Shown: positions 33 to 54,226, counted from the stretch's first letter. The stretch is 64,000 nucleotides of DNA from Ruditapes philippinarum (GCF_026571515.1 NW_026858658.1:62001-126000), one strand, 5' to 3'. Numbers and translations: made by a program. Notes: generated by a model not told the origin, from the letters alone.

Positions 33-1520
33 TATATTTTTAAGGGGAGGACCCTAGATAATGTTGGTATAACTTTTGCATGTATATTATATCTATGCTT
101 CACTTAATGATGTTAGATTGTATAAATTGATCATGTACAAAGTGTACAATTAAATATTATCAAACTAAAAAGTCATAAGTCATACAAAATAGTAAAAAAT
201 AATTAAACACGGTAAAAAAAAACACATATTCAAAAACATGATAGGGTATTTGTGCCTGTAATAAATCAGCCGAGAAGGGTTGCAGCGAAGTTTTAAACAA
301 TTAGAAATTAGAACCAATCTTCTCAGTTTGCATGTCAAAGGTCAGGACTCACCCTTGCACTTTAGAAACGTTCAAATTCACATCAAATAATGATTTTCTT
401 ATAGCTGACTCAGATCCTTTTAGACTTTAGTAAAATATCGAATATGTATTTAATTATAAACATCTTGAACTTGCTTTTAAACCATTTAAACTTTGCCTAT
501 TAATACTGAGCCTACTTTTCCGTAAATACTCACTGAACGTGGTCAACTATCTCCTTGGTTATTATTTTAATAGATCAGGATTTCCGGGCAGTATCATCGC
601 CCCTATTGTTCTGTACGATTCATCTCGTCCGAATTCAATACCCGTCCGATTACTACTTCAAAATTACCCGATACCAGCGCGTTTGATCTTTTCCCGTATA
701 ATAGTAGCTTTATGATTGCGTTTCGGATTTAATTCTATCATAAACTCGCTGTTATCGTTTAGCAGCATAGTATTATTAGTAATTTAAATATAGCAACAGC
801 GATATGAGGATTACTCGTGCCGACTTTCACTACCGTTGCGGCGAGCATTTCAATACGTGTTCCGTTGTTAAAAGATTGCCGTATCATATCTTTAGCTTAA
901 AATTGACGAAAATCGGTTTGATTTATATTACGCGCGAGTTTTAATCAAATTTCACTGGTAAAGTTTGTTTAGATTAAGGCTAATACTTCTGTAACGTAAT
1001 TTTGTCACCTTTTGAAAGGGACAGGGTGGGAAAAGGTCAAACAACAAACTGACCTCTGGCCAAAGTAAACTATTAACAGCTTTTCTGGACTTATCCTTTG
1101 ACATCTATCGTTGAAATATGCTGGTATTTTTCTTAAATCCTGAATTTTGGAATATTTCCTTTTTTATGTTTCTTCATAGTTTCAAAAATTCTTTGAGATT
1201 TGTAAAATGTTCAGTAATTTTGTTGCTGATGTTTGTTGTAATTGTCTTATAAGTTTTTGGATTTTATCAAAAATTAAAATCTTTTTTTCCTTATTATACC
1301 AGTCATACATAACATTCAAGAGCAAGTACTTTAAATTTAAAACTTCCGTATATCTCGGAGACTGAAATAAAATAACGATTCTGCAAAGACGTTGTCTTTC
1401 ATTTCGGGTCATTTAAAAATGTTTCATAGGTTAAAAAATCAAACGTTTTATGATTTCAAAAGGCCAATAATTGCCTTGTTTTCAATAGTGAGATTTATAT
1501 ATGTACATATTCTACTGCAA

Positions 1521-8000: not shown

Positions 8001-8669
8001 AAAAGTTGAAAGCTATAGATGTAACATTTTTGCGATTTGATTGTATTTTAATTATACAATTGGGTTATAATTTTCAACGTAGCGATTATAGCTTTTTTGC
8101 ATTGTCTTTATTTTATTATATTTAAAAAAAAAATTTGGTTATTTTTGATAACAGTTTTATTATATTTTATAATACTACACTCGTTTATTTCTATGAAGAA
8201 AGTCATGTAATAAACTTATTAATAATATTATAATACAGTATTATGATAAAGACGAATTGATTGATAGTCAATACTTAACAGAATTTTATCTAACAAAAAT
8301 CATAACATCTTTCTTACTTTTATCGACACAAGGTCTCAGTATCATACATCATTTCTTTACTTGTTAAACAAACATTTTTTCATCGCAGAAGAAAAATTTG
8401 TAATTGAAAACAAACACGCCTGCCATACGGCTGTCAATTTACCCTTTGATGAAATTTCACTATCTTCAATTCTTTACTATTTGATATTGATCAGTGGTTT
8501 TTGATCAAAATGGAAAATCAGTGAATATAAAAAAATCTAAATTATTAAAAAGTAAATAAATATACATGATAACGATGACAGCCTTTGACAGGCGAAATAT
8601 CGGTTTATAATTTTCGTCAAATGTAGCGTATCGATTCTTATGTCAACAGTAGAGAAAACTCCCGATATC

Positions 8670-8700
8670 TTACTGGCTGACGAAGACGGTGGGCGGAGCT
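8670..8700 (+). promoter_or_regulatory. Candidate proximal promoter of the protocadherin (GC box)
   Basis: GGTGGGCGGAGC (Sp1-type GC box at 8691-8696) in a locally CpG-rich patch about 600 bp upstream of the ATG. A pyrimidine-rich acceptor (…tatattgcag, 9067) suggests a 5'-UTR intron. Confidence 0.35.
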
Positions 8701-9305
8701 TAGTACGCGATACGGATCTCCGCTCAACGAAATATTATTATCGGCAAAGCAAAATTCTCACATTTTTACAACTACTGGTTTTAAAGTGAGCGCATGTTTA
8801 CATTTGGATTAAACATTTAGATCTTGACATTTTCATTATTTCGAATGGACTGGAAGTGTGAAAACGTAAAAGAAAAATAGAAAAAGGTGTGCTTGAAATA
8901 CTATTTGGATTTGATCTTATACTTTGTAAAATATTGGTGTTAATGTTATGTTTACTTTGCGCAATGTTGTTTTTTGAGCATCATTAATATTTTTCATACG
9001 ACTTGCGTTACTTACACAGATTAACCCTTTACGAAAATATTTTACATCTTTTATTTGTATATTGCAGGACTTATACAGTGAAAAAAAGGAATGCAGATTT
9101 TAAGAAAAAAGTTTATTTAGTACAAATTGAAATAGTCAATATTGTCATTGTGCACGGAGAATTTTTGGATGTGCTGTGTGTATCGATACATCATGTAATT
9201 TCGCGATCAACAGGTGTCAACACTTGCAGTAAGGCACAGTGATAAACAACAAGGGGTTTTATTTCTTCATGGATATATATTAGAAACGTATTCGCACTCT
9301 ATAAA

Positions 9306-12002
9306 ATGGCATGGGGAGGGCGTGAGCGCTCGAACATGGAGTTTACGACCACCGTGGGAAGAGGTTTATTGCTAATGATTCTGGTGTTAATTATGGATCT
9401 TAGAGTTAGTGCCGAGGTGACATATTCAGTGGAGGAGGAACAGGGGTCAAAGTTAATTGGCAATGTTGGTGAGGATTATGACCTGCGATCTACCATGACA
9501 CAAGAGGAGTATTCGAACCTAGCCTACAAGATTCTGTCTAGTGGTAACAGTTTAGCTCATTTCTTTCAAATTGACTCATCCGGACAGCTTTTTACGAAAG
9601 AGCCTATAGATCGAGAACAGCTTACACATTGCTCAAGGGAACTGACGTGTGTGATATCTCTAGATATTGCCGTCAAAGCGACGATAGGTGCGTTCTTCCG
9701 TAAAATTAACGTAAAAATTGAAGTTATAGATATAAACGACAATAGCCCGGTCTTTCTTAAAGGAATTGATAGCGCTTCATTTCTAGAAAATTCAGAGGGT
9801 GCTATAGCTTCTATTGATGGGGCTGAAGATAATGACGCCGGGAATAACACGGTAGTTAGATATTACGTAGACACCCCAGACGTTCCATTTGACGTCATGT
9901 TAGAAAAAATGGAGGACGGTAGTTCAACTGTAAAAATAATCGTAAATGGAAAATTAGACCGCGAAGAAAAAGAGTTCTATCAAATAAGAATTGTGGCAGA
10001 AGATGGGGGTACGCCAAAGAAAACAGGGGCAATAGTTGTAGATATCACTGTACAAGACATGAACGATAATTCGCCAAAGTTTGACCGTCCATTCTACAAC
10101 GTTACGTTGAATGAAGACACGGCTATTAACACGGTGTTTGAGACAATATCAGCCACGGACGCAGATGCTGGTGAAAACGGTCGAGTTGAGTACAGCCTAA
10201 GTGCTAATCAAGATGAATCAATTCTTAATACGTACGCTATTAATCCTACTACAGGTGAGCTTAGCGTCATCAGTCAGTTAGTTTACGTAGCAAATGAGCA
10301 GACGTTAATATTTGTAGAGGCCACTGACAAAGGTCCTCAACCAAGGCCCCAGCAAATTCGAGTTTACGTTAATATAATAGACCTTAGTAATAATCCGCCA
10401 GAAATTAATGTAAACATTCTCCAAGGAGACATCAATGCACGAATCTCGGAATATGCCAACGTTGGTGCACCCGTTGCTCATATTGCCGTCATTGACAGTG
10501 ACACAGGACGTAACGGCAAAGTTGAATGTATTGGGATAAGTGATAATTTCGGATTAGAAAGATATGAAACAAATGAATATAAAGCAGTTGTTACAAAACC
10601 TTTGAATAGGGAACTTGTGGAGACACATGAGGTCACTATAATCTGTAGAGACAGTGGATCGCCGCCGTTAAATACGACAACCAGTTTTATTGTAGTTGTA
10701 GTTGACCAGAATGACAATGCTCCGAGATTTTCACAAGGGACTTACTTTGCAAAAGCTGAAGAAAATAACCTCGTTGGTGACGTAGTAGCTAAAGTATCAG
10801 CCACGGATATTGATTCAGGGAACAATTCTAAAATTGAATATAAGCTCGTAAGCACGAGTGGATATAGCTTCTGGATCGACCCTGACCTTGGCGAAATTCG
10901 AGCCAATTTTAGACTAGACAGAGAAAATGTGTCACAACTAGAAATCGTTGTCGAGGCAGAAGATCATGGGGACCCGAAGATGTCAGCTACATCGACCGTT
11001 ATTCTTTCAGTCACTGATCAAAACGATAATTATCCAATCTTTTCGCAACCTAATTACGAGTTCTTTGTTTTAGAAGGTGTTCCGCACAATACCACCGTAG
11101 ATCAGTTAACAGCCACGGATAAAGATTACAGGGAGAACGGCACGGTTTCTTTCTCTTTTAACACACCGCCTCCATCTAGCTTCCCATTCATCCTGTATTC
11201 GGACGGGACAATTAAGATGATACGGACTTTAGACAGAGAGAAGCAAGGGACATATAAGTTCACGGTCGTCGCCTCGGATCAGAGCGCTAAACCTCTGAGC
11301 AGCTCGGTTACTGTAACAGTGATTGTTCTCGATGTCAATGATAATGCACCAGTGTTTATCTTCCCTGATAAAGATAACAACACAGTTACGATTCCGCTTT
11401 CAAGTACACCTGAATCGGTCTCAATTGTTGTCGAAGCAACTGATATCGATGCCGATAGTAACGGAGAAGTGTCTTATTCAATACTAGATAATAATGTGAC
11501 AAGTTTGTTTTATATTGAAAGTGCAAACGGCGTAGGAAATGTAAAACTACGCCGCTTACCCAGTTCATCAGAACCGCTAGAGTATGCGTTTATAATTAAA
11601 GCAGTAGACAACGGTAGGCCAAGCCAATATTCTTTGCAACTTTTGTCTGTATCGTTTACAAAAGACGCTGAAGCGCCAGTGAATAGACAAAATTTTCTAA
11701 TTGCTATATCATTGGGCTGTGTTACAGTAGTTTTATCAATTGCAATAGTCTTAACTATATACCTCATCCGTCGTCATGATAGACTCCAGTTAAAGTCAAG
11801 TGCTGCTCAATATGACGACAGGGCAGACATGGAAATCGTCCCTGGTGATATGAAGCACAGGGAAGAACTTGGCAGTACTTCCTCTGGAAGCAAAGAAAGT
11901 TTAAAGAAAGTTAGCTTTTCAACGGACCATAACTCGAGTCTTGAGTCCGAGCCCAACCGGGACGTGTCCCAGTCTCCATTGGTGAACCTCGATAACATGA
12001 AG
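9306..12002 (+). CDS. Protocadherin (7 cadherin repeats, delta1-like), coding exon 1: signal peptide, EC1-EC7, TM and start of the cytoplasmic tail
   Basis: 919-aa ORF with Ca-binding linkers DINDNSP, DMNDNSP, DLSNNPP, DQNDNAP, DQNDNYP, DVNDNAP; DRE and AxDxG motifs; the protocadherin EC1 C-x5-C (CSRELTC); TM FLIAISLGCVTVVLSIAIVLTIYLI; KKVSF motif. Donor AAG|gtaagg at 12003 (phase 0), so the last ~20 aa of the ORF are intronic. Confidence 0.95.
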
Positions 12003-15000
12003 GTAAGGATATCGTTACATTACAGACCTCTTTTTTTCCTTCCCTTTGCCTTACATTTATGTTGATCTTTTGTTTGAAAGACCAAACACACAGTGACCAG
12101 TGTGATTATGCTTTTTGCTGAAAATTTAAGAATTGTTAGAAAACTCTTTTACTTATTAATTGACGAAAACTAGTGTAATGCATTTACTATTCACAGCAAC
12201 TGTTACTTACGTGTAAAGCTTTGTATGATTTGGGAATGCGGAGATAGAAAGTTCATATTTGCATAAGTCTAGCAGGTTAAGGGTTCAAGTACTTTTAGGA
12301 TCACATATCATGTTATAGGAAAGTTTCGTATCGATACTGTTTTTGATATGCTCCCATAAAGATATATTCTCATATAAGTCATATTGGTATATATATTTAA
12401 CAGAAGAACTTAAATTTGAGTAAGGAATATTATTGAAATATTTATTAATCCAGGAACATAAAGTTTTATACTTAATGTATAAATAGTTAATATTTAAATA
12501 TGAATAATTGTACATGTATATTTTATTTTATTTTATTGTCGTAGAATATTCAGTTTTAATACCGTTTTCCTGCGTTTAATGTCCCTACTTGAATAATTAA
12601 TGAAATTTTACTACGTGTTCTAATGTGTATCAATTTTAAGAAAATTTGAGTTATTTAACAGGTTTATGTGGGTTTTCCGTATAATTTAAAAACTTGCATA
12701 CGTTCAGTTCGCGAATTAGTTTTAACAGCATGTCATACAATTACTTAATTATTGCACAGTTGTGTTCACATGTTGAAAAAAAAGTTTATTTAAAAAGAAA
12801 GAAGAAAAAATAGGCCATAGTCACGGCATTTATTTCTATTAAAACCACATTTACATGCCATGGAACATTTCACAGCGACGCTGGTGACACTAATTTTTAG
12901 TGAAATGAAATTAAAATTTAGCGTGACCATACCTATTCTATCATAACGTAGTATTTGTATTTCGCGCTGAATGTACTTGAGTTAAAAATATTCGAACCTT
13001 GAGTTTAGTAAGGGTAGAAGTATAAGTAGGGTCATACGTCTTCCATTGAGTGGTCACATTTTTATACAAAAAATGGAATGGATGTCAAAATATGTATTTG
13101 TCATAAGGGGAGCGAACATTTAAGGAAATTCGATCGCCGGTTAAGATTGTGTGAAGTATGCATCGTATCTGATACAGTGTTATCATATTTCATGATATTT
13201 AAAAAAAGCCACGACAATAATATCTTTGTGAATGCATGCCCGAATATATATGTATATAATTTATCTAGGCTAGTTCATGTATATGTTTGTTTTATGATGA
13301 GGGTTGGTCGGCGTGGGGTGGGGTGAAAAAAGTCGTTCTGATGCTGACACAAAATATTGTAGAAACACTGAACAGCAATACATATCTATGAGACATGTAT
13401 ATCTGTTATCAAAGATCTCTAATGTTAGCTTAAATATTTCTTTAAGATTACCACTTAAAGCATTTTGTACCTAAGGTTTTATCATTTTATCATTATCATC
13501 ATCATCATTATTATTATTATTATTATTATTAAATCATATTTAAATATGGTTCAATATTAAGTTATAACTCATATACATTGAAAATTCATTGTATATTTTA
13601 GCATTAATCATGTTGTCATTGGTAATAAAATATAATTGTTTCTTTCAACATGTCGGTGCACATATGCGTTAATGAATATATAATATTATTTTAAAAGTTG
13701 TAACATCGGCTGCATACATAATCTAAGGAGGGCAAATTTGGTCGACGTTTATCCGTAGCATTCATGAATTTTTAATTTACACTTGTTGAACAGACATCAC
13801 ACATTGTCACCGTATTTAAGTTCGTTTTAAAGTAGAAATTCAAATGTTTAATGATACCTTAAAGGAAGTTTTTGAAGGACTCTTGTTCCTTAAGCTCGGT
13901 ACTTCACGTGCACACCGTTCATTTTTAACAATCACTGTTTCTAAAGCTTATTTGACTTTTGGCTACTTCATGTTTGACTAGTTTTAACAGATTAATATAA
14001 CTCGGACGCAGTTTAGTGTATGATTTTTTCAACAGAAATTTATTTAGCAATGAAAATATTTAAACATAACAATTGTATAGAATAGATATATTCAATTCAA
14101 ATGGATCAGTCATTCGCAGCAATAAGAAATACTGTCGCGAGCCACCGAGGTTTAACTTAGACCGAAGTGAAGCCGAAAGTCCGATTATGACAAATATTTT
14201 ATTTCCTAAATAAAACATCGTAAATCGATCTTTGATTTGTTTATTTTTTAGTAATTGAAAATGACCAGAAAGTCGCGACATTTCTTTTCTAACCTCGCGT
14301 TCAACTAAATAACGCTAGACCTAACGCAACCACGGCTCGAGCAAATTGAAAGGCACGAGTTAATCATGCGGTCATGATAAATGGCAGGGATGGCAGTACG
14401 GATAAATCAAATTGTGGACAAAATAACTTTAAGTTACTCTATTGTTACAAAGTATAATAGATTGTAATGAGTAATTTTTAGTCAACTTTAGTCACAATGA
14501 AGAGATCTGTAATGCATACATGTTTATTTTATACAGTTGGATATCATTAAAGTACCCTACCCACATAGCTGTGCCTAAGTTTTAAATATATTAGTACATT
14601 TTAGTGAAAGTTTTGAAAGGTCCTGACAAACAAATATAAATAATGTTTTAACTGTCCGGCTTTGGCATTAACTTAAAACAGGCTTTTATCTTTGACTTAA
14701 TGCTCCGTTCCCTTAACTGTGATAATGCGTGTTTTCTATTAGAATCAAGATAAATGCAATAAATATAGCGACGAATTGGTTTTAATATTAAAACAATAAT
14801 ACTTTGTTGAGATTTAAAATCTTGAGCGAATTTTTGTAGAACTTGATAAAAACTATCACAGCAAATGGTGGCGAGTATAACCCGGCTTAATTCCACACTG
14901 ACGAATTAATGAACACGAAACAATGCAACAAATGTTAAAAACCATTTACTTTTTCTTATAAATTGACTGCGTTCCAAAAACACGTGGGACAAATTTTAAT

Positions 15001-36037: not shown

Positions 36038-36880
36038 ATGATGCGACTAACTTTCACAGTATACGTTACATTTGTGACAATTTGCATCGTGAGGTCATCG
36101 AGAATTCACGAGACAACCGATAATGAACTTAATGAAAAAGTGAGGAATATAATTGAAAATATTCTTCAAGAAAAGCAAATAACAAATGGAGGAGAAAAAA
36201 GTGGCAGAAATGTGGACATGAAAGTTGAATATCTTGAAAATAAATTCAAAGAAATGGAATCTAAGCTCGCGGAGCAAGAAAAAACTATCGCCAGTCTGAA
36301 GAATGTGATAAAAAAGATGGAGCAAGAAAAGGACAAAGATATCATAATAAAAGACTCAAATGGAAGCAAACGTAATAGCAGTAACATTGTTGTCGAAGAA
36401 GAAGACACACGAGACGTAGACGTTAGTCAACTTATTGCACCGGAAAGAAGAGCGAAGAGGGCAACAACAAATATTGCTTTTTCAGCTTACTTGACCCATA
36501 CGAATTCTCATACAGTTATTGGACAACCAATAAAATTTGACCACGTGCTTATCAATGATGGACAAGGCTATAACAATTATACGGGCTCGTTCACCGCGCC
36601 TGTTGCCGGTGTTTATTTATTCACGTTCTCAATCGACTCCGGAAAGACGACATTTGTTAAACTTGTTGTTAATGGCGTGAACCAAGTCGATGTTATTGCA
36701 AACCCTCACACAAACGTTGCTGACAAACGTCTCTCGCATTCGATGGGCGGAAATACCGCCATCGTGCGTGTGGCCCAAGGTGATGCGGTATTGGTGGAAA
36801 CATATGAAACTGCAGACGGTCAGGTCTCATCTAGTGATACGTTCAGGCTCTGTACGTTTTCTGGCGTACTCCTCTACTAA
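36038..36880 (+). CDS. Secreted C1q-domain-containing protein (signal peptide, coiled coil, RRAKR, gC1q); intronless CDS
   Basis: 280-aa ORF with hydrophobic N-terminus, heptad-rich VEYLENKFKEMESKLAEQEKTIASLK, and gC1q motifs IAFSAYL, IKFDHVLINDGQGYNNYTGSFTAPVAGVYLFTF and TFSGVLLY. Confidence 0.95.
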   Translation: MMRLTFTVYVTFVTICIVRSSRIHETTDNELNEKVRNIIENILQEKQITNGGEKSGRNVDMKVEYLENKFKEMESKLAEQEKTIASLKNVIKKMEQEKDKDIIIKDSNGSKRNSSNIVVEEEDTRDVDVSQLIAPERRAKRATTNIAFSAYLTHTNSHTVIGQPIKFDHVLINDGQGYNNYTGSFTAPVAGVYLFTFSIDSGKTTFVKLVVNGVNQVDVIANPHTNVADKRLSHSMGGNTAIVRVAQGDAVLVETYETADGQVSSSDTFRLCTFSGVLLY

Positions 36881-38744: not shown

Positions 38745-39611
38745 CTAGTGATGAATTTCAGGGTATAACAACGTCCCACAGAATGTACTAAGACGGTATT
38801 TATCACTAGACGCCACCTCCCCACTGACGTCATAAACTTCGACAAGGACTGATTGGCCAACTCCAACATGTATTATCGCAGAATTACCACTCATGTTCTC
38901 TCTATCCTGTGTATTAACATGAGGGTTTGTGACGGCATCCACGACATTCCTACCATCAACGTTCAGACGGACAAACGTATGAACACGAGAGTCGAATTGA
39001 AACATGAATAGGTAAGTTCCGGATATAGGTGCAGTAAATGCGCCAGTGTATGAATTGTAGCCGGCACCGTCATTCAGATGAACTCTGTCGTACTTGATAG
39101 CTTGTCCTGGAGACATATGCGAATTTGTGCTCGAAAGATAGGCTGAAAACGCTATATTTGGTATTGTAGCTGCTTGAGTCGGTACAATTTGTCTTTTTCT
39201 CCTCATTGTATTGTGGTAGTTCACAAAATCTTCATTCTTGATGTCCTTGCATTTCTGGTATAGAAATTCAATAGGATTAATTAGAGAATCGTTACGAGCT
39301 TTATTGTCGTCAGTTAATTTCTCAAGTAAACCATTCGTTTGGTTATTCAAAAAGCAGATAATCAGATCCATGTCGGCATTTTCCTGCTCTAGAAATTCAA
39401 TCCTTTCCTCCATCCGAGTATTTAGTTCTTTTAGCGCCTTAATTTCCTTCAATATTGTCTCAGTTCTTTCACTTTCCTTACTCCTTTCTTCTTTGAGAAT
39501 GTCGGTTACCTTCTTTGTTATCAATGCTTCAATCTCACTTATGTCTGATTTAACGGAGGCACCAAGAGACATTGTTATTACACAAAGCACAGCGAGGCTT
39601 TTGACTAACAT
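38745..39611 (-). CDS. Secreted C1q-domain-containing protein (signal peptide, coiled coil, RRKR, gC1q); intronless CDS
   Basis: 288-aa ORF with signal MLVKSLAVLCVITMSLGA, a coiled coil, and gC1q motifs NIAFSAYL, YNSYTGAFTAPISGTYLFMF and STFCGTLLY. TATAAAT at 39729-39723 and AATAAA at 38659-38654 on the minus strand. Confidence 0.95.
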   Translation of the reverse strand: MLVKSLAVLCVITMSLGASVKSDISEIEALITKKVTDILKEERSKESERTETILKEIKALKELNTRMEERIEFLEQENADMDLIICFLNNQTNGLLEKLTDDNKARNDSLINPIEFLYQKCKDIKNEDFVNYHNTMRRKRQIVPTQAATIPNIAFSAYLSSTNSHMSPGQAIKYDRVHLNDGAGYNSYTGAFTAPISGTYLFMFQFDSRVHTFVRLNVDGRNVVDAVTNPHVNTQDRENMSGNSAIIHVGVGQSVLVEVYDVSGEVASSDKYRLSTFCGTLLYPEIHH

Positions 39612-40252: not shown

Positions 40253-41086
40253 ATGATTCGAATAATGTTATCATTTTATGTTGCATTGTTAACGAGTTGC
40301 ATCGTGTCATCATCAGTAATTCATGAAACAAATTATGATTCGGAACTAAATGAAAAAGTAAGGACTATTGTTGAAAATTTTCTTCAGGAAAAATTAAATG
40401 TTAAGGGAGAAATAAGTAACGGACACGTAGAAAAGAAAATTGAACACCTTGAAAATAAACTTAAGCAAATGGAAATAAAGATAGCAGAACAAGACAAAAC
40501 TATAGCCGATCTGAAAAGTGTTATAACCAATATGGAACCAGCAAACGATAAAATAATTGAAACGTTTTTAAACAGCTCAAATGAAAACAAACATAATAGT
40601 AGTAAAATTGATGAAGCCGAAGATATGGACGTTGGTAAATTGATTGCCCCTGGACGAAGAGTAAAACGGGCAGTTGGAAATATTGCTTTTTCAGCTTACC
40701 TGACCCAAACGAATTCTCATACAATTGTTGGACAACCAATTAAATTTGATCAAGTGCTGCTAAATGATGGACAAGGGTATAATAAATATACGGGGGCCTT
40801 CACTGCACCTTTGTCCGGTGTTTACTTATTCACATATGCGATTGACACTAGAAAATTGACATTTGTTCGACTGGTTATAAATGGTGTAAATCAAGTCGAT
40901 GCCGTCGCAAATGTTCACACGAATGCTGAGAGTCGTCATTCACAATCAATGGGTGGCAATACCGCCATTGTGCATGTTGGACACGGTCAATCGGTGCTAG
41001 TGGAAACATACGAAATACCAGACGCCGAGACTGCATCGAGTAATACTTTTAGACTTTGCACGTTTTCTGGTGTACTATTGTACTGA
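40253..41086 (+). CDS. Secreted C1q-domain-containing protein (signal peptide, coiled coil, RRVKR, gC1q); intronless CDS; close paralog of 36038-36880
   Basis: 277-aa ORF that aligns by eye over its full length with gene 1 (ELNEKVR, KIAEQDKTIA, LIAP, NIAFSAYLT, TFRLCTFSGVLLY*). Confidence 0.95.
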   Translation: MIRIMLSFYVALLTSCIVSSSVIHETNYDSELNEKVRTIVENFLQEKLNVKGEISNGHVEKKIEHLENKLKQMEIKIAEQDKTIADLKSVITNMEPANDKIIETFLNSSNENKHNSSKIDEAEDMDVGKLIAPGRRVKRAVGNIAFSAYLTQTNSHTIVGQPIKFDQVLLNDGQGYNKYTGAFTAPLSGVYLFTYAIDTRKLTFVRLVINGVNQVDAVANVHTNAESRHSQSMGGNTAIVHVGHGQSVLVETYEIPDAETASSNTFRLCTFSGVLLY

Positions 41087-47014: not shown

Positions 47015-47952
47015 GTAAATATCTAATTGTATTATAATGTTATATTGGTCAAAGAAATGTTCTACCACAAATTCGCATAATATAATACTATTCTGATAAA
47101 TATTGACACGTTTTTGAATTTAATAATGTTAAAGTAAATATTGACGAATGAGTGTCAGGTTATTGTCAAAGAGAGAAAAATGATATATAAATAGTCAGGA
47201 AGATACCTTTAGTATGACAATAAAATTCCATGCCGGGCAGATACAGGATTCAAAGTTACAAAGACATTTCAGAACTCGGGTATTCATTGACATTATTTTA
47301 ATAAAAGTGTTGAAATTTCGAAACGCATAACCCAACAATGTATAAGTGACAACATATACATGTACCAAGACATTTTTATTGTTGTTGCTTTTCTTGTTTT
47401 TTGTTGTTGTTTTTTTTTTGGGGGGGGGATGGGGGGTTTGTTGTTGTTGTAATCCTGTCATTTAATAGAACAATGCAAACGTATGTATTCTTTTATCTTT
47501 ATTTGATCTGATGAAACAATCTATTATTGTTACGGCAAAACAAGAACAAAAGAAGTGGATAAGCAAAGTAATATTGGTAATGTTATATACAGTACTGCTG
47601 ACATTATTCTCTTTTTTTCCGTTATCAAGATTAGCTTAATAAGTTATTAAATTCAAATGATTGGCTATCATTATAATAGTCATTGATAAAAAAATTTGAT
47701 AAAATAATGGTTTATAAATAATGGTAATAAAAAAATCAAAATTGCCTAAAATGTAAAAAAAGACTGTCCCACTTTTTTATAAATCGAACGTTACTGGATA
47801 TTAATGTAATATTTCGCGAGTCATGTAGGTTATTGATTAATCCGCCAAATAGAATACAAAAGTATGGCAAAAAAATAAAGTTTTTTTTTTTACTTTCACA
47901 TGTGCACTCACTATTAATTTTACTCTACGATGGGCATAATGTCGGCGTTCAA

Positions 47953-48476
47953 TCAAATTTCCGGTAAAGGATTTCTCTCACATATTTGTATTAAACTTCT
48001 GTTACAATCATCATATTGCCATTCTTGAGAAAAGTACCCGAGACGCCTACAATATAAATTTAAAGCCCCATTCTTCACTCCCTTCATTGCTGCACTCGCG
48101 CCTTGATTAACTGGTGATTTGGTTGTCTGTGTTTTGTCGCTGTCTGGCTCTAGTCTACCATCTTCTAATTCTGTATTGCTATGAACTGTTGGTTGATGGT
48201 AAGTAGGGGTGGAATTTTCGTCTACGGCTTCCGTTACAGTGCCATGCTGGTGTCCGGCGCCTAACCAAAATCCGTAACCGGAAGTCGGAGTAGGCAAAGA
48301 GTTACTGATCGACGCCATCTTTGTGTCAGTATTTTTAGTTGTGTGTGGCAGCGAATGCATTTCATGTTCTTCTATCTCTGGATTAATGAAGAACCCCCTA
48401 CCGGATTTTAACGCTAGCTGTGTAACACCATCTGTACTGGACTTGTCGTCTGCAAGACTGTTTACAGTAGTCAAGG
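47953..48476 (-). CDS. Type II membrane C-type-lectin-like protein, coding exon 6 (last): insertion, FWLG, insertion, C…W..DDC…ICE
   Basis: Acceptor ttgttttaatgtag|CC (phase 1) leads into the 173-aa ORF, which contains GFWLGA and LYCRRLGYFSQEWQYDDCNRSLIQICER. Confidence 0.85.
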
Positions 48477-48841
48477 CTACATTAAAACAAAGTTGTTAAT
48501 TAGTTTGAATCATCATACCATCGTGAAACAGCAAATCAGAATCCCTAAAGACAGTCCAAAACGGCAAATTTGAAAATAATGAAGGTTCGGTTTGATTGAG
48601 CCTATTCATGGACAGAAATGAAAGATGCAAGTTACCGTCTACGTCCTTAGTACTGGCTTAAAATAAAAAAAGTATGGTAAAGTATTGAACTTAGAAACAT
48701 CTGCAATTGTGTTCATGCGGCAGTTACCATTGTAACTTCAATGTGACAAATTCGTACCTTCCAGGAAAAGCGGCGTATGGCCACAAAGAATTTGAATTCG
48801 TGTGTCCTAAATGAGAAAACAATAGGCGGAATGAAATAAAA

Positions 48842-49078
48842 TGAGCCGCGTCACGACAAAACCAACATAATGGGTTTGCGACCAGCATGGATCCAGACCA
48901 GCCTGCGCATCCGCGCAGTCTGATCAGGATCCATGCTGTTCGCTTACCAACTCTATTACATGTAGAGAACCTGATAGCGAACAGCATGGATCCTGATCAG
49001 ACTGTGCGGATGCACAGGCTGGTCTGGATCCATGCTGGTCGCAAACCCATTATGTTGGTTTTGTCATGGCACGGCTCA
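48842..49078. mobile_element. Palindromic MITE (237 bp), copy 2, in the last intron of the lectin-like gene
   Basis: Same arms and length as 29982-30218. Confidence 0.9.
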
Positions 49079-49821
49079 AATGATATCTTAAAAGAGGATC
49101 AGATGTTTAGAAGCTTGTATGAATTTAAGAATATAAAAATACATCAGAAAAAAAAAGTTAAATATTGTAGAACTTACAATGTGGCGTTTGGTCAGTATGC
49201 TCATTTTGCCCATCCTCTAAAGCGTCCTTAATAAAGCCCAAGTCGTGAGCAAGCATTTTATGTTCAGCAATACAACATCCTGTCAAAAGTAAAATCTACC
49301 AAATTATAAATTTCAGACTTTTAAAATAATTCTATCTTGCATTTGGTGGTACATGAAAAACTTTTGCTCAACTTTTCGCTGTTGAAAATGTTCACAATTT
49401 CTCTCATATATTCCATATTCACTAAAAATACTTTCTTTTTTTCCATTATTCAGCGAATGAATAGGCTTAAACAACATTAATTCAAGGTCAATTATTGTGA
49501 AAGATTATAGCTTGGACCACCCTTAGTAGATTCGAAAGCACGACCCGTATCGCAGAAAAGTTAACATTAAGTAATTCATTTCCACAATGTCTGTATTTTA
49601 AACTACCAAAGTTTTTTATTCCAAAGTACCAACAATTGTTTTCCATTCCGACAAGCTATCTATTCTTAACTACCAATTATTGTAATTCATTTTCATAAGT
49701 TATTTTATTCTAAACTACGAATTATTGTTTTTCATTTAGACAAGTTTTTATTTAAAAAAAACCAACAAAAATACAAAAAGGGTCATTCATTTTCACTTCC
49801 TTAAAACATTTAATAACCTAC

Positions 49822-49921
49822 CTATATATCTGTTTATTTGAGTATTCATGAATTCTTGAACCTTTTTCGCCTCCTTGGTATCATTAACAAGGGGCACTGC
49901 TTCTATACTCGCGCAATATTC
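49822..49921 (-). CDS. C-type-lectin-like protein, coding exon 5 (helix alpha1 Cys to alpha2)
   Basis: tatttacag|GAA…ATAG|gtaggt; 100 nt, phase 0-1; EYCASIEAVPLVNDTKEAKKVQEFMNTQINRYI. Confidence 0.85.
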
Positions 49922-50389
49922 CTGTAAATAAAGAAAAATAAATTAAAATAAAGATAACACATAATTATGAGTCGTCTCCCTTTTTCTTACTCAAGAACCG
50001 CGTTACCAGGGATACGAGATCAATGTCACGTGGGTAGAAGCCCTTTGCTTTGACAAAGACAAGATATGCAAATCCTTACATATCGGACTGGTGTTAAAAC
50101 CTGTGTCGGAAACTTCATCTGGCAACGGAAAGCCAAGATCAGACCGGGTATCGTGATCCGAGCCGCAACGTATAACATATATTATAAATATATCACATGA
50201 CATGGCTTCTATTAACCCTAAACCTGTTGAATGTGTGGTATTGATTTTTCCTGTTTTGAATCTGGAACATTCCATTCAATGTTTATTTCAATATAGAAAT
50301 AAAAAAAAAACTACCAAACAGTATAGAGCTTATAAAGGCCGCGCTTTACGTACAAAATTTGCCTGGCTTTATACTCGTGGTAAACGTAC

Positions 50390-50475
50390 CTCTGCGTCTG
50401 AACTATGCACTGGCGTGGAACTGTACATGTAGCACTTCCGGTTATAATATGTCCAGTTGGCAGGGCAATCAGTCT
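50390..50475 (-). CDS. C-type-lectin-like protein, coding exon 4 (CTLD N-terminus)
   Basis: tttcattcttag|AG…GAG|gtacgt; 86 nt, phase 1-0; (E)TDCPANWTYYNRKCYMYSSTPVHSSDAE is the canonical CPxxWxxxxxxCY long-form CTLD start. Confidence 0.9.
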
Positions 50476-50592
50476 CTAAGAATGAAAGAAAATAAATATA
50501 TACATGAAGTAGTATAACTATTTTGAAACTACACACATTTAATTTTGTGCGTAAAATGTCAAAACAAGTTCATTTTCAATACTTTCAATGTG

Positions 50593-51381
50593 TTTACTCA
50601 TGTGATAAAACAATATGCTTAGTCATGTGATAAAACCAATGTGTTTAGTCATGTGATAAAACTAATGCGTTTAGTCATGTAATAAAACAATGAACTTGGT
50701 TATGTGACAAACCAATGCGCCTAGTCATTTTATAAAACAATGCACTTAGTCATATTATAAAACAATGTGCTTAGTTGTGTGATGAAACAATGTATTTAGT
50801 CATATTATAAAACAATGCGTTTAGTCATGTGATAAAACAATGCATTTAGTCAGGTGATAAACCAAATGCGTTTAGTCATGTCATAAACAGTGCGATTAGT
50901 AATGTGATAAAACAGTGCGTTAAGTAATGTGATAAAATATTGCGTTTAGTCAAGTGATAAAACAATACATTTAATCATGTGATGAACCAATGCACTTAGT
51001 CATGTGATAAAACAATGCGTTTAGTCATGTGATAAAACAATGTATTTAGTCATGTGATACAACAATGCACTTAGTCAACTAATAAAACAGTGCGTTTAGT
51101 AATGTGATAAAACATTGCGTTTAGTCATGTGATAGAACAATGCATTTAGTCATGTGATGAACCAATGCACTAAGTCATGTTATAAAACAATGCATTTAGT
51201 CATGCGATAAACAAATGCGTTTAGTCATGTGATAAAACAATGTATTTAGTCATGTGTTAAAACAATGTGTTTAGTCATGTTATAAAACAATCTTTTTAGT
51301 CATGTGATAAAACAATGCGTTTAGTCATGTGGTAAAACAATGATTAAAGTCATGTGGTAAAACAATGAGCGTCATCATGTA
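50593..51381. repeat. 25-bp minisatellite (about 31 copies), intronic
   Basis: Consensus TTAGTCATGTGATAAAACAATGCGT, head-to-tail with scattered substitutions and no unique spacers. Confidence 0.95.
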
Positions 51382-51510
51382 ATCTCACACTCGTTGCCAT
51401 ATAATACAACACAAAAAGACCTTTCATTAAAAAGTTTAAAGAATTGAAAGAGCTCAAACATTTTATATTAAAGCATATTTGAAATATTCTGATATATCTA
51501 AGTTTTTTAC

Positions 51511-51603
51511 CTTTGACAGAAGCTTGGCTGGGTACATTTTCTTGTTCTGGAAAAGTGGAATTCTCCTCTAAGGAAGGCAATAGCTGTTCTCGTGTCATGA
51601 ACA
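51511..51603 (-). CDS. C-type-lectin-like protein, coding exon 3 (stalk)
   Basis: aatattccag|TG…AAAG|gtaaaa; 93 nt, phase 1-1; (V)FMTREQLLPSLEENSTFPEQENVPSQASVK. Confidence 0.8.
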
Positions 51604-51820
51604 CTGGAATATTGTGTGAATAATTTTGTTTAGAAATGAACGATGGTGATAAGATTCACACAGAAATGTTTCAAATAGGTAAAAGTAATAGGTTATAGTA
51701 AAATTGATTAACAGAAGTAATTCTTTTCATCTCATTACAATTTGCCGGGCAAAAAAGATTGGAACCGCGGCACCCACGAGGACTACCTAAATAGACAACG
51801 TAATGTCATTTATCACTTAC

Positions 51821-51997
51821 CTGTTAAATACAAGGTGATGCCGCCTGTTGCCAGAAGGACGAACGAGCTGACAATGATGAAATACCGTATAAAAGACCAG
51901 CCAGATTTGTTGATGTCCTCGTTGTCAGTATCGTCTCTCTGATCATCTGACGTCACGTTTTCTTCTACGTCAATAATAGATTCTTCACGCAGGGATT
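51821..51997 (-). CDS. C-type-lectin-like protein, coding exon 2 (acidic cytoplasmic tail and signal-anchor TM)
   Basis: atataatatag|AA…ACAG|gtaagt; 177 nt, phase 1-1; (E)SLREESIIDVEENVTSDDQRDDTDNEDINKSGWSFIRYFIIVSSFVLLATGGITLYLT. Confidence 0.85.
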
Positions 51998-52559
51998 CTA
52001 TATTATATAAATGAGTAATAAAAGAAATCCTTGACTGAAAACTTTTACTAAAAGCTGTTCATTATTATTTTAATAAAATGACTGGTTAAATTTGAGTGAA
52101 GTTGTAACATATTTAGTAAAACAGTGCACCAGAGATACATTTATATACTAGTAAACACATCAGAGATAACGTAACACTGTTACACACTCGTATAAATACG
52201 GAATTCTGTTAATTCTGTAAATTCCCTTTGAATATATTTGATAAGAAATCATTTGATGTTACAATGCAGTAGACGTGATCTTAGCACACTATTGTAAGGA
52301 ACGCCGTGACTGACTTATGTGATCAAGCAAGCATTGATAAGAGAATCACGGCGTTCCATAGAAACACATTAAACATCATACTGCCCCGTTTCAACATGGT
52401 ACTGTCGCGTTATAAACTTCGTAATATCGCGTTGTCACCGTGTTTTCGCAATTTTGTTCTCGAAAACTGGCAAGTTAACATAAATTTGCTATGTATTAAT
52501 TTAAATGTGACAAAGGTAGCACATGCCAGGTCTTACTGAAACATATCATAAACACATAC

Positions 52560-52599
52560 CCTTCGTGCTGTCTGCTTCAGTGTCACTTTGTTTAGACAT
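52560..52599 (-). CDS. C-type-lectin-like protein, coding exon 1 (start)
   Basis: Acceptor attatttcag| with the exon starting at 52615, an in-frame upstream TAG, and ATG at 52599; encodes MSKQSDTEADSTK followed by G|gtatgt (phase 1). Confidence 0.7.
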
Positions 52600-54166
52600 T
52601 TCCTCGATATTCTACCTGAAATAATATTTAAGTAAGCTTTTGTTTTGCTGTGCAGTGAAAAAAGGAAAAAAATAAAATTAAAGAACGTCAACACCAACTG
52701 CTTTATATCCCTAGTGGCAAGCATTTTCATTGAGACCTCCTTCAAAATACGATTGGACAATATCCGAAAGGAGTGACCAAGGTGTCTCCTCTTATCCGAT
52801 TGACAGGAATAGACACGTGACACGCGCCTGCTCAGGAAATGCGATTCAATTTTGTCGGTGGAAAATACGGGGGCAAAAAGGTGCCACATGCTCGATTAAG
52901 TTTTTTTGTTTTGTTCGTTTTTTGTTTGTTTGTTTGTTTTTTGTTTGTTTGTTTGTTTGTTTGTTTTCATTTTTATTCAAAGTTCGAAACATCAACAAAA
53001 AAGAAGAGTACTAGAGAATAGTGCACATCGAATAATCAAAGATACGAAAAAAACAAACAATTTTTTAAGTAAAATTTTGAAATGCATGGTACAAGAGAAG
53101 CTTTGTAGTATGACAACATCATTAAACTACGTAACGTTTTATTTATTGAAACGAGTAAATACGTAAAATACTTGGATTATTGATAACATTAAATGGTACT
53201 TACCGAATACAGTATACAATACCTAAAAATATTAGCACTTCTTATTATGTTGTAGCAATTGTACAAAAAAGTCACAAAGTGGCGGTTTATATATTTGTTT
53301 GAAATATATTAAGACGAAATGTAAATAATTCAATGTTACATGACCATGTCAGTCGTGTTTTAAAATGGAGTTAAAATAATTATATATATTAATATCTATG
53401 CGTGAATGTTTTTAGATTTTGTAAAACGATGGATATTATTAATAAAGAACATAAAAATATAACATATGCTGCAGTTTGTAATTCCATTTTTTTTTTTTCA
53501 AATATGGTGGTCAATTTGATACTTTGTAGTGGTTGTTAGAAATTAACACTTAAGGATACACAGGTGTCATTATGCAATAAGCTTTGTGAAATTAAATTAA
53601 CATTTTGAAGTAGAATCTACAAAATTAATGCCAAATGAAAAACAAAATCAGCAAGTAGTTTATCTTTAAACATTTATCATGTGCTATGTAAAACACTTTT
53701 TAAACATGTGCTTGGCCTTATTTACATAGCTGGGTAAGTGTCTCGTTCTATAATACTTCGCAGCTCCCACCTCCCACCGGATGTGTTCCGTGAATGCCTT
53801 GCCGATCTTCAAGACAACTTTTGTCGTATCTCACACCTATAAAATAGTGGTTATTTCAACGAACTGGCCAGGTGTAATACAAATGTTGCGATTGAAGCGG
53901 TGCTGCTAAAAAAATATTACGCGTTCTTATCAAAGTGTGTGAACATTTCGCGCCAAAATTGATATTCTTGCAGATGTTTGTTTTTATATTTGTAAACATC
54001 AATTGAGAATTAAATTGATTGATAAGAAGCGTGAATTCCTAGAGAATAACATCCTTTATATTTTCGATATATAATTTTCTCACCAGCCAGTATGATTCTA
54101 ATTCACTTGCTTTGCTGACACCTATTTATATCATACAGTTTCACACTGATGTATTTTTGTTAGTAA

Positions 54167-54226
54167 GTGAGTGATGAGTGAGTGAGTGAGTGAGTGAGTG
54201 AGTGAGTGAGTGAGTGAGTGAGTGAG
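54167..54226. repeat. (GTGA)n microsatellite
   Basis: Direct observation. Confidence 0.95.

What the first reader, a model, noticed from the sequence alone, without database searches (positions are those of the whole stretch)
47953..52599. Hidden type II membrane receptor with a C-type lectin fold split by two long disordered segments
Seen: six minus-strand exons join through canonical GT-AG sites with matching phases (1,1,1,0,1) into a ~339-aa protein that the ORF track does not show. It has an acidic N-terminal tail, one TM helix, a short stalk, and all landmarks of a long-form CTLD (CPANW…KCY, EYC, alpha2, FWLG, LYC, W..DDC, ICE; six Cys). About 68 Ser/Thr/His/acidic residues lie between alpha2 and FWLG, and about 69 lie between FWLG and the next Cys. 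Established: the first linker is normally a few residues and the second (long loop) roughly 30. The EPN/QPD and WND calcium/sugar motifs are absent here (WQY replaces WND). Inference: a non-carbohydrate-binding, NK-receptor-like CTLD scaffold displaying two large, possibly O-glycosylated or variable loops, which domain searches would likely miss or fragment.
Basis: partly seen in the sequence, partly recalled or inferred. Interest (0 to 1): 0.8.

Follow-up and report, generated by a model that had tools for sequence, protein, structure and literature searches.

The report
Clam membrane protein with split lectin-like domain
This is a real, transcribed Manila clam gene for a membrane-anchored protein whose C-type-lectin-like domain is broken up by long, fast-evolving spacer segments.

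Summary
The gene is real, lies on the minus strand and is expressed. They also keep the whole last exon unspliced, so the "inserted" segments are in the mRNA.

One junction is wrong. The transcript carries an extra in-frame 102-nt exon (49279-49178), so by exon arithmetic the protein is 373 aa, not 339. The first insert is then about 100 aa, not 68.

The organism is Ruditapes philippinarum. NCBI annotates only a 200-aa N-truncated model (LOC132753876).

The only full-length relative found is Mercenaria mercenaria LOC123542072 (435 aa). It has the same landmarks in the same order and longer inserts.

- **N-terminal half of the domain:** significantly like a C-type lectin-like domain (CTLD); E 6e-6 against solved structures, hhalign 89%.
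- **C-terminal piece:** weak but collinear.
- **Pfam:** every match is below threshold.
- **AlphaFold2 on the Mercenaria protein:** assembles only the N-half plus the last strand. ESMFold's nearest neighbours are CTLDs.

The inserts evolve neutrally (omega about 1) and the core is weakly constrained. Several paralogs are pseudogenes.

Verdict: a venerid-clam-specific, highly derived CTLD membrane protein. It is a new variant of a known kind, and its fold and function are unproven.

The parts
52560..52599 (-). Coding part of the ATG exon (MSKQSDTEADSTK plus 1 nt). The exon runs 5' to about 52615-52618, behind a cag| acceptor. A further 5'UTR exon lies upstream of 53200 and was not located.
   Evidence: Sequence reading. 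In one search, X1 and X7 contigs extend 58-59 nt beyond exon 2 into bin 52422-52618, and about 105 nt more of the X1 contig do not lie within 52619-53200.
51821..51997 (-). Exon 2: acidic cytoplasmic tail and the single TM helix (FIRYFIIVSSFVLLATGGITLYLT).
   Evidence: Translation. Splice sites. Spliced contigs X1 rec1, X7 rec16 and X2 rec10. 88-90% identical in paralogs. The TM codons have omega about 0.2.
51511..51603 (-). Exon 3: extracellular stalk (FMTREQLLPSLEENSTFPEQENVPSQASVK).
   Evidence: It evolves fast between paralogs: 63-73% identity and dN above dS.
50390..50475 (-). Exon 4: CTLD strands beta0/beta1 with cysteines C0 and C0' (DCPANWTYYNRKCY...).
   Evidence: 67% identical to the Mercenaria protein P0006. 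It lies in the region that matches CTLDs.
49822..49921 (-). Exon 5: CTLD helices alpha1 and alpha2 with cysteine C1 (EYCAS...KKVQEFMNTQINRYI).
   Evidence: It aligns to P0006 150-181 and to alpha1/alpha2 of clam CTLDs.
49178..49279 (-). It is 102 nt, in frame, and encodes G-CCIAEHKMLAHDLGFIKDALEDGQNEHTDQTPH. It completes the conserved 'YIGCC' and forms the start of insert 1.
   Evidence: X1 contig pieces 49920-49821 / 49278-49178 / 48476-47525. AG and GTAAGT borders. NCBI model P0001 begins at its internal Met and crosses into exon 6. Conserved in L008, L009, L010 and L012.
47953..48476 (-). Exon 6 (coding part, stop included). It holds the rest of insert 1 (about 66 aa), the conserved PTSGYGFWLGAGHQHG motif, insert 2 (about 66 aa) and the CTLD C-terminus (LYC...EWQYDDC...IQICERNP).
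   Evidence: ORF. Covered without any internal splice by X1 rec1, X2 rec5 (47956-48474) and X7 rec12. 99% identical to P0001. The C-terminus aligns to CTLD beta4/beta5.
47525..47952 (-). 3'UTR, at least to 47525. An AATAAA lies at 47503-47498.
   Evidence: X1 rec1 reaches 47525 and X2 rec4 and X7 rec11 lie within it. Sequence.

Best explanation
The locus is an expressed seven-coding-exon gene of the Manila clam. It encodes a roughly 373-aa single-pass type II membrane protein.

**Architecture.**
- A short, very acidic cytoplasmic tail without tyrosine.
- One TM helix.
- A stalk of about 30 aa.
- An ectodomain that descends from a long-form C-type lectin-like domain.

**What is conserved.** Three blocks are conserved and collinear:
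- beta0-beta1-alpha1-alpha2, carrying C0, C0' and C1;
- a PTSxYGFWLGAGHxHxHG motif, taken as the WIGL/beta2 strand;
- beta3-beta5, carrying C2, C3 and C4.

**The two inserts.** Two lineage-variable, probably unstructured segments separate the blocks.
- Insert 1 (about 100 aa) lies where split clam CTLD genes have an intron, just upstream of WIGL. It is partly encoded by its own small exon, so it may have arisen by exonisation of intron sequence (inferred).
- Insert 2 (45 to about 150 aa among relatives) replaces the Ca2+/sugar-binding long-loop region.

**Function (inferred).** The protein cannot be a classical Ca2+-dependent lectin. Most likely it is a cell-surface protein that presents Thr/Ser/Pro-rich loops and a His-rich motif on a disulfide-stapled CTLD remnant.

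**Family.** It belongs to a small family known only from venerid clams. The family is turning over by duplication and pseudogenisation under weak constraint.

**Shown:** gene structure, expression, family membership, homology of the N-half to CTLDs, absence of the sugar motifs, and conserved insert positions.

**Inferred:** full fold, topology, glycosylation, ligand and origin of the inserts.
For: **Transcription and gene model.**
- Spliced contigs from three studies, and an unspliced last exon.
- NCBI partial model P0001, 99% identical.

**Family.**
- Paralogs in the same genome with the same exon set.
- An exhaustive HMMER search of 1.84e9 representatives gives five hits at E 0.001 or better. 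Four are genuine: P0001, P0005, P0006 and P0007. The fifth, P0008, is spurious.
- P0006 is a 435-aa Mercenaria protein with the identical order of landmarks.

**CTLD homology.**
- The family profile against solved structures gives 89 matches. The 60 listed are all CTLDs, with ASGR1 at E 6.2e-6.
- hhalign against 13 canonical clam CTLDs: probability 88.7%, E 2.6e-6, for the N-half.
- The C-terminal 46-aa profile hits langerin CTLD C-termini first, E 0.14-1.4. hhalign places it at the right end of the domain, E 0.003-0.004. Pfam Lectin_C positions 72-107 match at E 0.19.
- A clam-CTLD HMM places YGFWLGAG at the WIGL position.

**Fold.**
- ESM Atlas on P0006: all ten best family-bearing feature hits are in the CTLD clan. 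The structure neighbours are all Lectin_C, with TM 0.53 by target and 113 residues aligned across 115-435.
- AlphaFold2 was given alignment rows only for the N-half. It still places the last strand 429-433; the last residue block (431-435) averages pLDDT 87.
- That model matches 40 CTLD chains first. Z reaches 8.0, with 64-73 residues aligned and model range 121/123..435.

**Evolution.** Core omega is 0.52-0.65, TM about 0.2 and inserts 0.93-0.99.

**Intron position.** In split clam CTLD genes the intron lies 2-3 aa before WIGL.
Against: - No Pfam family reaches its threshold: Lectin_C 12.9 against 22.6 bits, UL45 19.7 against 27.
- Both AlphaFold2 runs leave beta2-beta4 and both inserts below pLDDT 50. 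The first run modelled the C-terminus as helices.
- The WIGL assignment rests on scores of -2.4 to 1.5 bits.
- Overall omega between paralogs is 0.69-0.90. RNA-contig variants are 21 nonsynonymous to 7 synonymous, about the neutral ratio.
- At least three paralogs carry stops or frameshifts.
- The fold evidence comes from the Mercenaria protein, not from the window's own joined product, which I did not build.
- Two conserved extra cysteines ('CC') have no partner in the canonical disulfide scheme.
Confidence: 0.55

Rival explanations
1. The gene and its CTLD ancestry are the same, but the topology differs. Strand beta2 (WIGL) would be the conserved 'YIG-C' formed across the exon 5/5b junction, right after alpha2. 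The domain would then carry ONE giant replacement of the long-loop region (about 170 aa here, about 220 in Mercenaria). The conserved YGFWLGAGHxHxHG motif would be a functional element inside that loop, for example a His-rich metal site, and not a core strand.
For: - 'YIGCC'/'FIGCC' is invariant in all paralogs and in Mercenaria, and follows alpha2 by 2-3 residues.
- The DC-SIGN/DC-SIGNR matches of the family profile run on to profile position 192, past FIGCC.
- In vertebrate AFP and group VII/XII CTLD genes, introns lie upstream of C1 and downstream of WIGL (PMC514892). That fits the exon 4/5 and 5/5b introns here.
- The ASGR1 loop 'YGHGLGGGEDC' aligns to the motif, but only as a 3.8-bit stretch.
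Against: - The clam-CTLD HMM puts the WIGL position on GFWLGAG, not on YIGCC.
- GFWLGAG closely resembles the real clam forms GFWVGATD and GFLIGGSD.
- AlphaFold2 models FIGCC as a continuation of helix alpha2, at pLDDT 73-79.
- In clam CTLD genes the intron lies before WIGL, not inside it.
Confidence: 0.25
2. The family is a decaying relic. A CTLD gene lost its long-loop region and its fold, and is still transcribed. It makes a mostly disordered, perhaps unstable, product with no conserved binding function. The remaining landmarks would simply not have eroded yet.
For: - Omega is 0.69-0.90 between paralogs and cannot be told from 1.
- RNA-contig variants are 21 nonsynonymous to 7 synonymous.
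- Pseudogenised copies sit on C14568, C3604 and C1850, and the C5545 copy has a stop three codons early.
- Depth in the RNA data is low: 5-27 in contigs, and almost nothing in the one raw RNA run sampled.
- The structure models are low-confidence.
Against: - The window copy keeps an open 373-codon frame across seven exons with intact splice sites.
- All six canonical cysteines, the CC pair, the FWLG motif, the TM helix and the ICERNP end are conserved between Ruditapes and Mercenaria. Meanwhile the inserts have diverged beyond alignment. This is the pattern of long-term purifying selection on the core.
- Core and TM codons show lower omega than the inserts.
Confidence: 0.15

Closest known systems
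Type II transmembrane CTLD receptors of vertebrates: group II (ASGR1/2, CD23, DC-SIGN, langerin) and group V (CLEC-2, LOX-1, NKR-P1, CLEC5A)
   Same: - The layout is the same: N-terminal cytoplasmic tail, one TM helix, a neck and a single C-terminal long-form CTLD with the extra C0-C0' hairpin.
- They are the best sequence and model matches: ASGR1 E 6.2e-6 and CLEC-2 E 7e-5, CLEC5A Z 8.0.
- As in group V, the EPN/QPD and WND Ca2+/sugar residues are absent.
   Different: - Only the N-half aligns significantly.
- About 100 aa lie between alpha2 and the FWLG motif, where these receptors have under 10.
- An unrelated 45-150 aa segment stands in place of the long-loop region.
- An extra conserved CC pair is present.
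- The tail has no ITIM, hemITAM or any tyrosine.
- No orthology is implied, because the family is seen only in venerid clams.
Canonical bivalve C-type lectins (the expanded CTL repertoire; for example the single-exon and two-exon Lectin_C genes of this same genome, and SPL-1/2 of Saxidomus)
   Same: - Same superfamily.
- Similar beta2 wording: GFWVGATD and GFLIGGSD against GFWLGAGH.
- Insert 1 sits where split clam CTLD genes have their intron.
- SPL-2 is among the top model matches, Z 7.5.
   Different: - The canonical genes pass Pfam at 52-77 bits. This family does not.
- The canonical genes keep W.W.DG / NW..GEPN / WND and a loop of about 35-40 aa.
- The thirteen I read show no such inserts.
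Viral CTLD-like type II envelope proteins (herpesvirus UL45, poxvirus A33R / OPG161-162)
   Same: - Best Pfam match of the Mercenaria homolog: UL45, E 7e-4, sub-threshold.
- Best ESM-feature neighbours, 0.85-0.87.
- These are also short type II proteins with degenerate, non-sugar-binding CTLDs that profile searches detect poorly.
   Different: - The scores are below any threshold and count only as leads.
- These viral proteins are short (168-187 aa in the neighbouring Atlas clusters), so they have no room for inserts of this size.
- There is no sign of viral origin. The gene has seven coding exons, and its paralogs share them.

Membership tests
Pfam Lectin_C (PF00059) / classical C-type lectin CRD | Score at or above the curated gathering threshold (22.6 bits) | tested here: not met
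   Window exon 6 alone scores 12.9 bits, E 0.19, covering profile positions 72-107 only. Exons 4, 5 and 5b have no Lectin_C match. The full-length Mercenaria homolog P0006 has no Lectin_C match and only UL45 at 19.7 against 27 bits. The joined window protein was not scanned.
Pfam Lectin_C (PF00059) / classical C-type lectin CRD | Ca2+-site-2 / sugar-binding residues: EPN or QPD before C2, and WND in beta4 | tested here: not met
   Read directly: WQY stands in place of WND, and paralogs have WQYVG or WHDVG. There is no EPN or QPD. A lone 'EPD' lies 31 aa before C2 and is 'EQD' in the paralogs.
CTLD superfamily (long-form C-type lectin-like fold) | Significant profile similarity of beta0-beta1-alpha1-alpha2 | tested here: met
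   Family profile A6 against solved structures gives 89 matches. The 60 listed are all CTLDs, the best at E 6.2e-6, covering profile positions 121-192. hhalign against 13 clam CTLDs: probability 88.7%, E 2.6e-6. Window exon 4 alone scores E 1.1e-5 against the clam-CTLD HMM with Z=1.
CTLD superfamily (long-form C-type lectin-like fold) | Six cysteines in the canonical order (C0, C0', C1, C2, C3, C4) | tested here: met
   DCP, KCY, EYC, LYC, DDC and ICE are present in the window exons. All six are kept in P0006, and the last three in P0005 and P0007. The actual disulfide pairing was not tested.
CTLD superfamily (long-form C-type lectin-like fold) | WIGL motif (beta2) shortly after alpha2 | tested here: inconclusive
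   There are two conserved candidates. GFWLGAG lies about 100 aa after alpha2; the HMM places it at the WIGL position but with scores of -2.4 to 1.5 bits. YIG-C lies at the exon 5/5b junction.
CTLD superfamily (long-form C-type lectin-like fold) | C-terminal beta3-beta4-beta5 block (C..., W.D..C, ..(I/V)C(E/K)) | tested here: inconclusive
   The block is collinear and correctly placed, but weak on its own. hhalign gives E 0.0034-0.0044 with probability under 10%. The best solved-structure hits are langerin C-termini at E 0.14-1.4.
CTLD superfamily (long-form C-type lectin-like fold) | The pieces assemble into one CTLD in three dimensions | tested here: inconclusive
   Tested on the Mercenaria homolog only. 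The first AlphaFold2 run gave pLDDT 49.6 with no assembly. The second run gave a confident N-half plus beta5, while beta2-beta4 stayed below 50. VIA-align listed 40 CTLDs first, Z 4.9-8.0, with 59-84 residues aligned. The ESMFold model in the Atlas has all CTLD neighbours, TM 0.53 by target.
Vertebrate group V (NK-cell-receptor-like) CTLD receptors | Type II single-CTLD receptor with a short long-loop region and a signalling motif (ITIM/hemITAM tyrosine, or a charged TM residue for adaptor pairing) | tested here: not met
   The type II layout and the loss of Ca2+ residues fit. The loop is not short but 66 aa or more. The 48-aa tail has no tyrosine, and the TM helix has no internal charge. The resemblance is functional analogy at most.

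The most novel reading that the evidence does not exclude
A venerid-specific class of surface receptor uses a CTLD core only as a disulfide-stapled scaffold. One insert of about 100 aa was created by exonisation of the ancestral intron just upstream of the WIGL exon. The Ca2+/sugar loop was replaced by a length-variable, mucin-like segment. The invariant GHxHxHG motif beside beta2 forms a new metal- or ligand-binding site. The freely evolving inserts would then give a rapidly diversifying recognition surface in an animal without adaptive immunity.
Probability: 0.12. Interest if true: 0.7.

Novelty: new variant of a known kind. Interest (0 to 1): 0.42.

Why it matters
**If the core folds.** This family would show that a metazoan CTLD tolerates insertions of about 100 aa at two defined sites: the alpha2/beta2 junction and the long-loop region. 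It would give a natural example of loop display on this scaffold. It might also document insert birth at an intron position.

**For annotation.** Profile-based counts of the very large bivalve C-type lectin repertoire miss members of this kind. The public model of this gene is N-truncated: 200 aa against 373.

**Limits.** The family is small, restricted to venerid clams in present data, and weakly constrained. No function is attached to it.

Tried and rejected
- I did not build the spliced protein. Fold work used the stored full-length Mercenaria protein P0006 as a proxy.
Most of the 223 joints were not listed.

**Searches that gave nothing useful**
- Exon-6 profile A1 against solved structures: no match.
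- The alpha1-alpha2-FIGCC stretch of P0006 alone against solved structures: only a chance ubiquitin match at E 1.2.
- Word-index searches with P0006 and with alignment A4: no further full-length relatives.
- ESM Atlas on the truncated P0001: no usable hit.
- The search of earlier findings: nothing by place or by words.
- Two literature searches: no description of this family or of such inserts.

**Rejected results**
- P0008 (2061 aa, E 2.5e-5) is a repeat protein that I take to be bacterial from its look (no source record was checked). A chance 'SISNSKLTPGDEYRLAVGAF' repeat adds up over nine copies, so I rejected it as a relative.
- MAFFT alignments that mixed fragments (A3, A5, A9, A10) misplaced rows, and I did not use them for folding.
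- I did not feed whole canonical CTLDs into the AlphaFold2 alignment, because that would make the fold test circular. Only their N-halves were used (A11).
- The N-half match of that second model (Foldseek probability 1.00) is therefore expected and carries no weight. Only the placement of beta5 does.

Full report
**1. What is in the sequence**

Exon-wise translations give:
- exon 1: MSKQSDTEADSTK;
- exon 2: an acidic tail and a 24-residue hydrophobic helix;
- exon 3: a 30-aa stalk;
- exon 4: TDCPANWTYYNRKCYMYSSTPVHSSDAE;
- exon 5: EYCASIEAVPLVNDTKEAKKVQEFMNTQINRYI;
- last exon: a 173-aa open frame.

The last exon contains ...PTPTSGYGFWLGAGHQHG..., then about 66 residues, then LYCRRLGYFSQEWQYDDCNRSLIQICERNPLPEI.

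Residue counts for the whole product come from exon arithmetic.

**2. Transcript evidence**

One read-laying run on 5,901 bases used four runs chosen.
- X1 contig record 1 (1,678 nt, depth 27) lies on 51996-51823, 51604-51511, 50475-50389, 49920-49821, 49278-49178 and 48476-47525.
- X7 comes from a declared RNA-Seq library. Its record 16 joins exons 4, 3 and 2 and runs 59 nt further, into exon 1.
- X2 record 10 joins exons 3 and 2.

The last junction, 49822/48476, is not seen. The X1 transcript passes through an extra exon whose true borders are 49279-49178 (tgacag|G ... ATT|gtaagt). It is 102 nt long, so phase 1 is kept. It encodes G-CCIAEHKMLAHDLGFIKDALEDGQNEHTDQTPH-(S).

The coding sequence is then 1,122 nt, or 373 aa.

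The last exon is covered without internal splicing by X1 record 1, X2 record 5 (47956-48474) and X7 record 12 (48029-48362). The 'inserted' segments are therefore part of the mRNA.

Other points from the same call:
- The 3'UTR runs at least to 47525. An AATAAA lies at 47503-47498.
- About 105 nt at the 5' end of the X1 contig do not lie within 52619-53200, so a 5'UTR exon lies further upstream.
- I could not test whether an isoform skipping exon 5b also exists.

**3. Identity and public annotation**

The last exon is 99% identical to NCBI XP_060600400.1, 'uncharacterized protein LOC132753876 [Ruditapes philippinarum]', 200 aa. That model starts at the internal Met of exon 5b and runs across the 5b/6 junction.
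- This confirms the extra exon independently.
- It also shows that the public model lacks the tail, the TM helix, the stalk and the first half of the domain.

**4. The family**

The same genome has further copies. All exons, including 5b, recur on C5545, C9488 and C14568.

| Contig | State of the copy |
|---|---|
| C9488 | Intact as far as its contig goes |
| C5545 | Stop three codons before the end |
| C14568 | Stops in exons 3 and 6, and Cys to Trp in exon 4 |
| C3604 | Frameshifted |
| C1850 | About 30% identical, full of stops |

An exhaustive HMMER search of 1.84 billion representatives found five proteins:
- P0001;
- P0005 (153 aa, Logan/ENA assembly);
- P0006 (435 aa, Mercenaria mercenaria LOC123542072);
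- P0007 (316 aa, Logan assembly);
- P0008, a repeat protein matched by chance.

Word searches found no other full-length member. In present data the family is known only from venerid clams.

P0006 has the same order of landmarks:
- acidic tail;
- TM helix;
- stalk;
- DCPGNWTYYNKKCY;
- EHC;
- EFM...KFIGCC;
- about 106 aa;
- TPTSPYGFLLGGGHQHNH;
- about 108 aa;
- FCRRYEPHLPEWRETGCLGSYVQICERNP.

Identity to the window is 67% in exon 4, 39% in exon 5 and about 55% in the last 30 residues. The inserts hardly align.

Insert 2 length varies between relatives:

| Protein | Approximate length of insert 2 |
|---|---|
| P0005 | 48 aa |
| Window gene | 66 aa |
| P0006 | 108 aa |
| P0007 | 150 aa |

**5. 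Is it a C-type lectin-like domain?**

*By curated thresholds, no.* Exon 6 scores 12.9 bits on Lectin_C (threshold 22.6), and P0006 only 19.7 bits on UL45 (threshold 27).

*By profile evidence, the N-terminal half is.*
- The family profile against all solved structures returns 89 matches. The 60 listed are all CTLDs. The best are ASGR1 (E 6.2e-6), CLEC-2 (7e-5) and botrocetin (1.4e-4), covering beta0 to alpha2.
- Against a profile of 13 canonical CTLDs taken from this clam's own genome, hhalign gives 88.7% probability and E 2.6e-6.

*The C-terminal block is weak alone but always lands at the right place.*
- hhalign E 0.003-0.004 on the last 24-26 columns.
- The nine best solved-structure matches are langerin C-termini, E 0.14-1.4.
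- All six canonical cysteines are in order and conserved across the two genera.
- The EPN/QPD and WND residues are absent.

**6. Fold tests (on the Mercenaria homolog)**

- **ESM Atlas.** Its own ESMFold model of P0006 has low overall confidence. Its nearest structures are all Lectin_C clusters (ASGR2-like, TM 0.53 by target, 113 residues aligned across 115-435). All ten best family-bearing feature hits are in the CTLD clan. The tool rates these as leads only.
- **AlphaFold2, first run, shallow family alignment.** It did not assemble the domain: mean pLDDT 49.6, with the C-terminus modelled as helices. Foldseek matches were CTLDs but at E 0.5-2 over about 45 columns.
- **AlphaFold2, second run.** I gave alignment rows only for the N-half (A11). 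These included N-halves of canonical clam CTLDs, so nothing informed the C-terminal pieces.
  - The N-half came out at pLDDT 86-92, which is expected.
  - The last strand 429-433 (VQICE) was placed as a strand. The last residue block (431-435) averages pLDDT 87. This was not imposed by the alignment.
  - Beta2-beta4 and both inserts stayed below 50.
  - The 40 best of 48,161 representative chains are all CTLDs. Z is 4.9-8.0, with 59-84 residues aligned and model range 121/123..435.

This neither confirms nor refutes a complete CTLD.

**7. Which motif is beta2?**

- It is the best-conserved stretch of the family.
- It resembles real clam forms such as GFWVGATD.
- The clam-CTLD HMM places it at the WIGL position, but with negligible scores.

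*For 'YIG-C' (the extra exon creates this second candidate):*
- It follows alpha2 directly and is equally conserved (FIGCC in Mercenaria).
- Its intron lies where some vertebrate CTLD genes have one, 'downstream of the WIGL motif' (PMC514892).

In split clam CTLD genes the intron lies instead 2-3 codons before WIGL. That fits FWLG if the upstream 66 codons of exon 6 and all of exon 5b are exonised intron sequence. I favour FWLG roughly 2:1 and give the other reading as a rival.

**8. Evolutionary constraint**

- Window against paralogs: omega is 0.69-0.90 overall.
- Partitioned: inserts and stalk 0.93-0.99, CTLD core blocks 0.52-0.65 (p = 0.04 and 0.24 for fewer replacements than neutral), TM helix about 0.2. 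The core-versus-insert difference is not significant.
- Variants between the window and the RNA contigs are 21 nonsynonymous and 7 synonymous, about the neutral ratio.

Over the short term the family is close to neutral. Over the Ruditapes-Mercenaria distance the landmarks are clearly retained while the inserts are not. The data do not separate diversifying selection from lack of constraint in the inserts.

**9. Reading**

The best-supported account is a lineage-restricted type II membrane protein built on a strongly derived CTLD. Its sugar-binding loop has been replaced, and a second long segment sits between alpha2 and the FWLG motif.
- A classical lectin function is excluded by the missing residues.
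- A surface-display or adhesion role, glycosylation of the Thr/Ser/Pro-rich inserts and a role for the His-rich motif are all inferences.
- 'NK-receptor-like' holds only as a description of layout.

**10. Limits**

- The joined window protein was neither searched nor folded.
- Run identities and tissues are coded, so I cannot say where the gene is expressed.

Noticed in passing
window 48833-49087 (intron between exon 5b and exon 6): A MITE-like element with 112-nt inverted arms, 92% complementary. Summed contig depth is 10^4-10^5, and raw RNA read depth is 5,000-10,000 per strand. Many reads break at its ends. It is a very abundant, transcribed repeat family of this genome.
   Followed up: partly
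window 50586-51367 (intron between exon 3 and exon 4): A tandem array of a 25-bp unit (CAATGCGTTTAGTCATGTGATAAAA), 31 copies, 81% matches. No RNA depth lies on it.
   Followed up: no
window 36038-36880 (+), 38745-39611 (-), 40253-41086 (+): Three single-exon genes for secreted proteins with a heptad-like region (by eye) and a C1q domain (Pfam C1q, E 2e-16 to 7e-21). They lie 7-12 kb from the CTLD-like gene. This is a small cluster of a gene type usually linked to bivalve immunity.
   Followed up: partly
window 9306-12065 (+): A 919-aa single open frame with six cadherin repeats and a C-terminal TM segment. It looks like a protocadherin (Pfam Cadherin, E 4e-86).
   Followed up: partly
window 48241-48255 (exon 6, motif GAGHQHG): The window allele has GHQHG where every paralog and the Mercenaria and Logan relatives have GHxHxHG, a 2-aa shorter His motif. 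The RNA contigs show no indel there, so it is not an assembly slip.
   Followed up: partly
L010 (G000:C14568), L006 (G000:C3604), L012 (G000:C1850): These are pseudogenised copies of the family. L010 has stops in exons 3 and 6 and Cys to Trp at C0'. L006 has frameshifts in exon 6. L012 is an old copy, about 30% identical, with several stops.
   Followed up: partly
window 52900-52966 and 54170-54225: Microsatellites lie upstream of the ATG exon: (GTTT)n and a (CACT)n-type run.
   Followed up: no
G000, many contigs: At least 94 Lectin_C matches pass E 1e-10 among 150 scored of 1,112 candidates. Many start at profile positions 37-42, which means a last exon beginning 2-3 codons before WIGL. This recurrent intron position in clam CTLD genes bears on the origin of insert 1.
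   Followed up: partly
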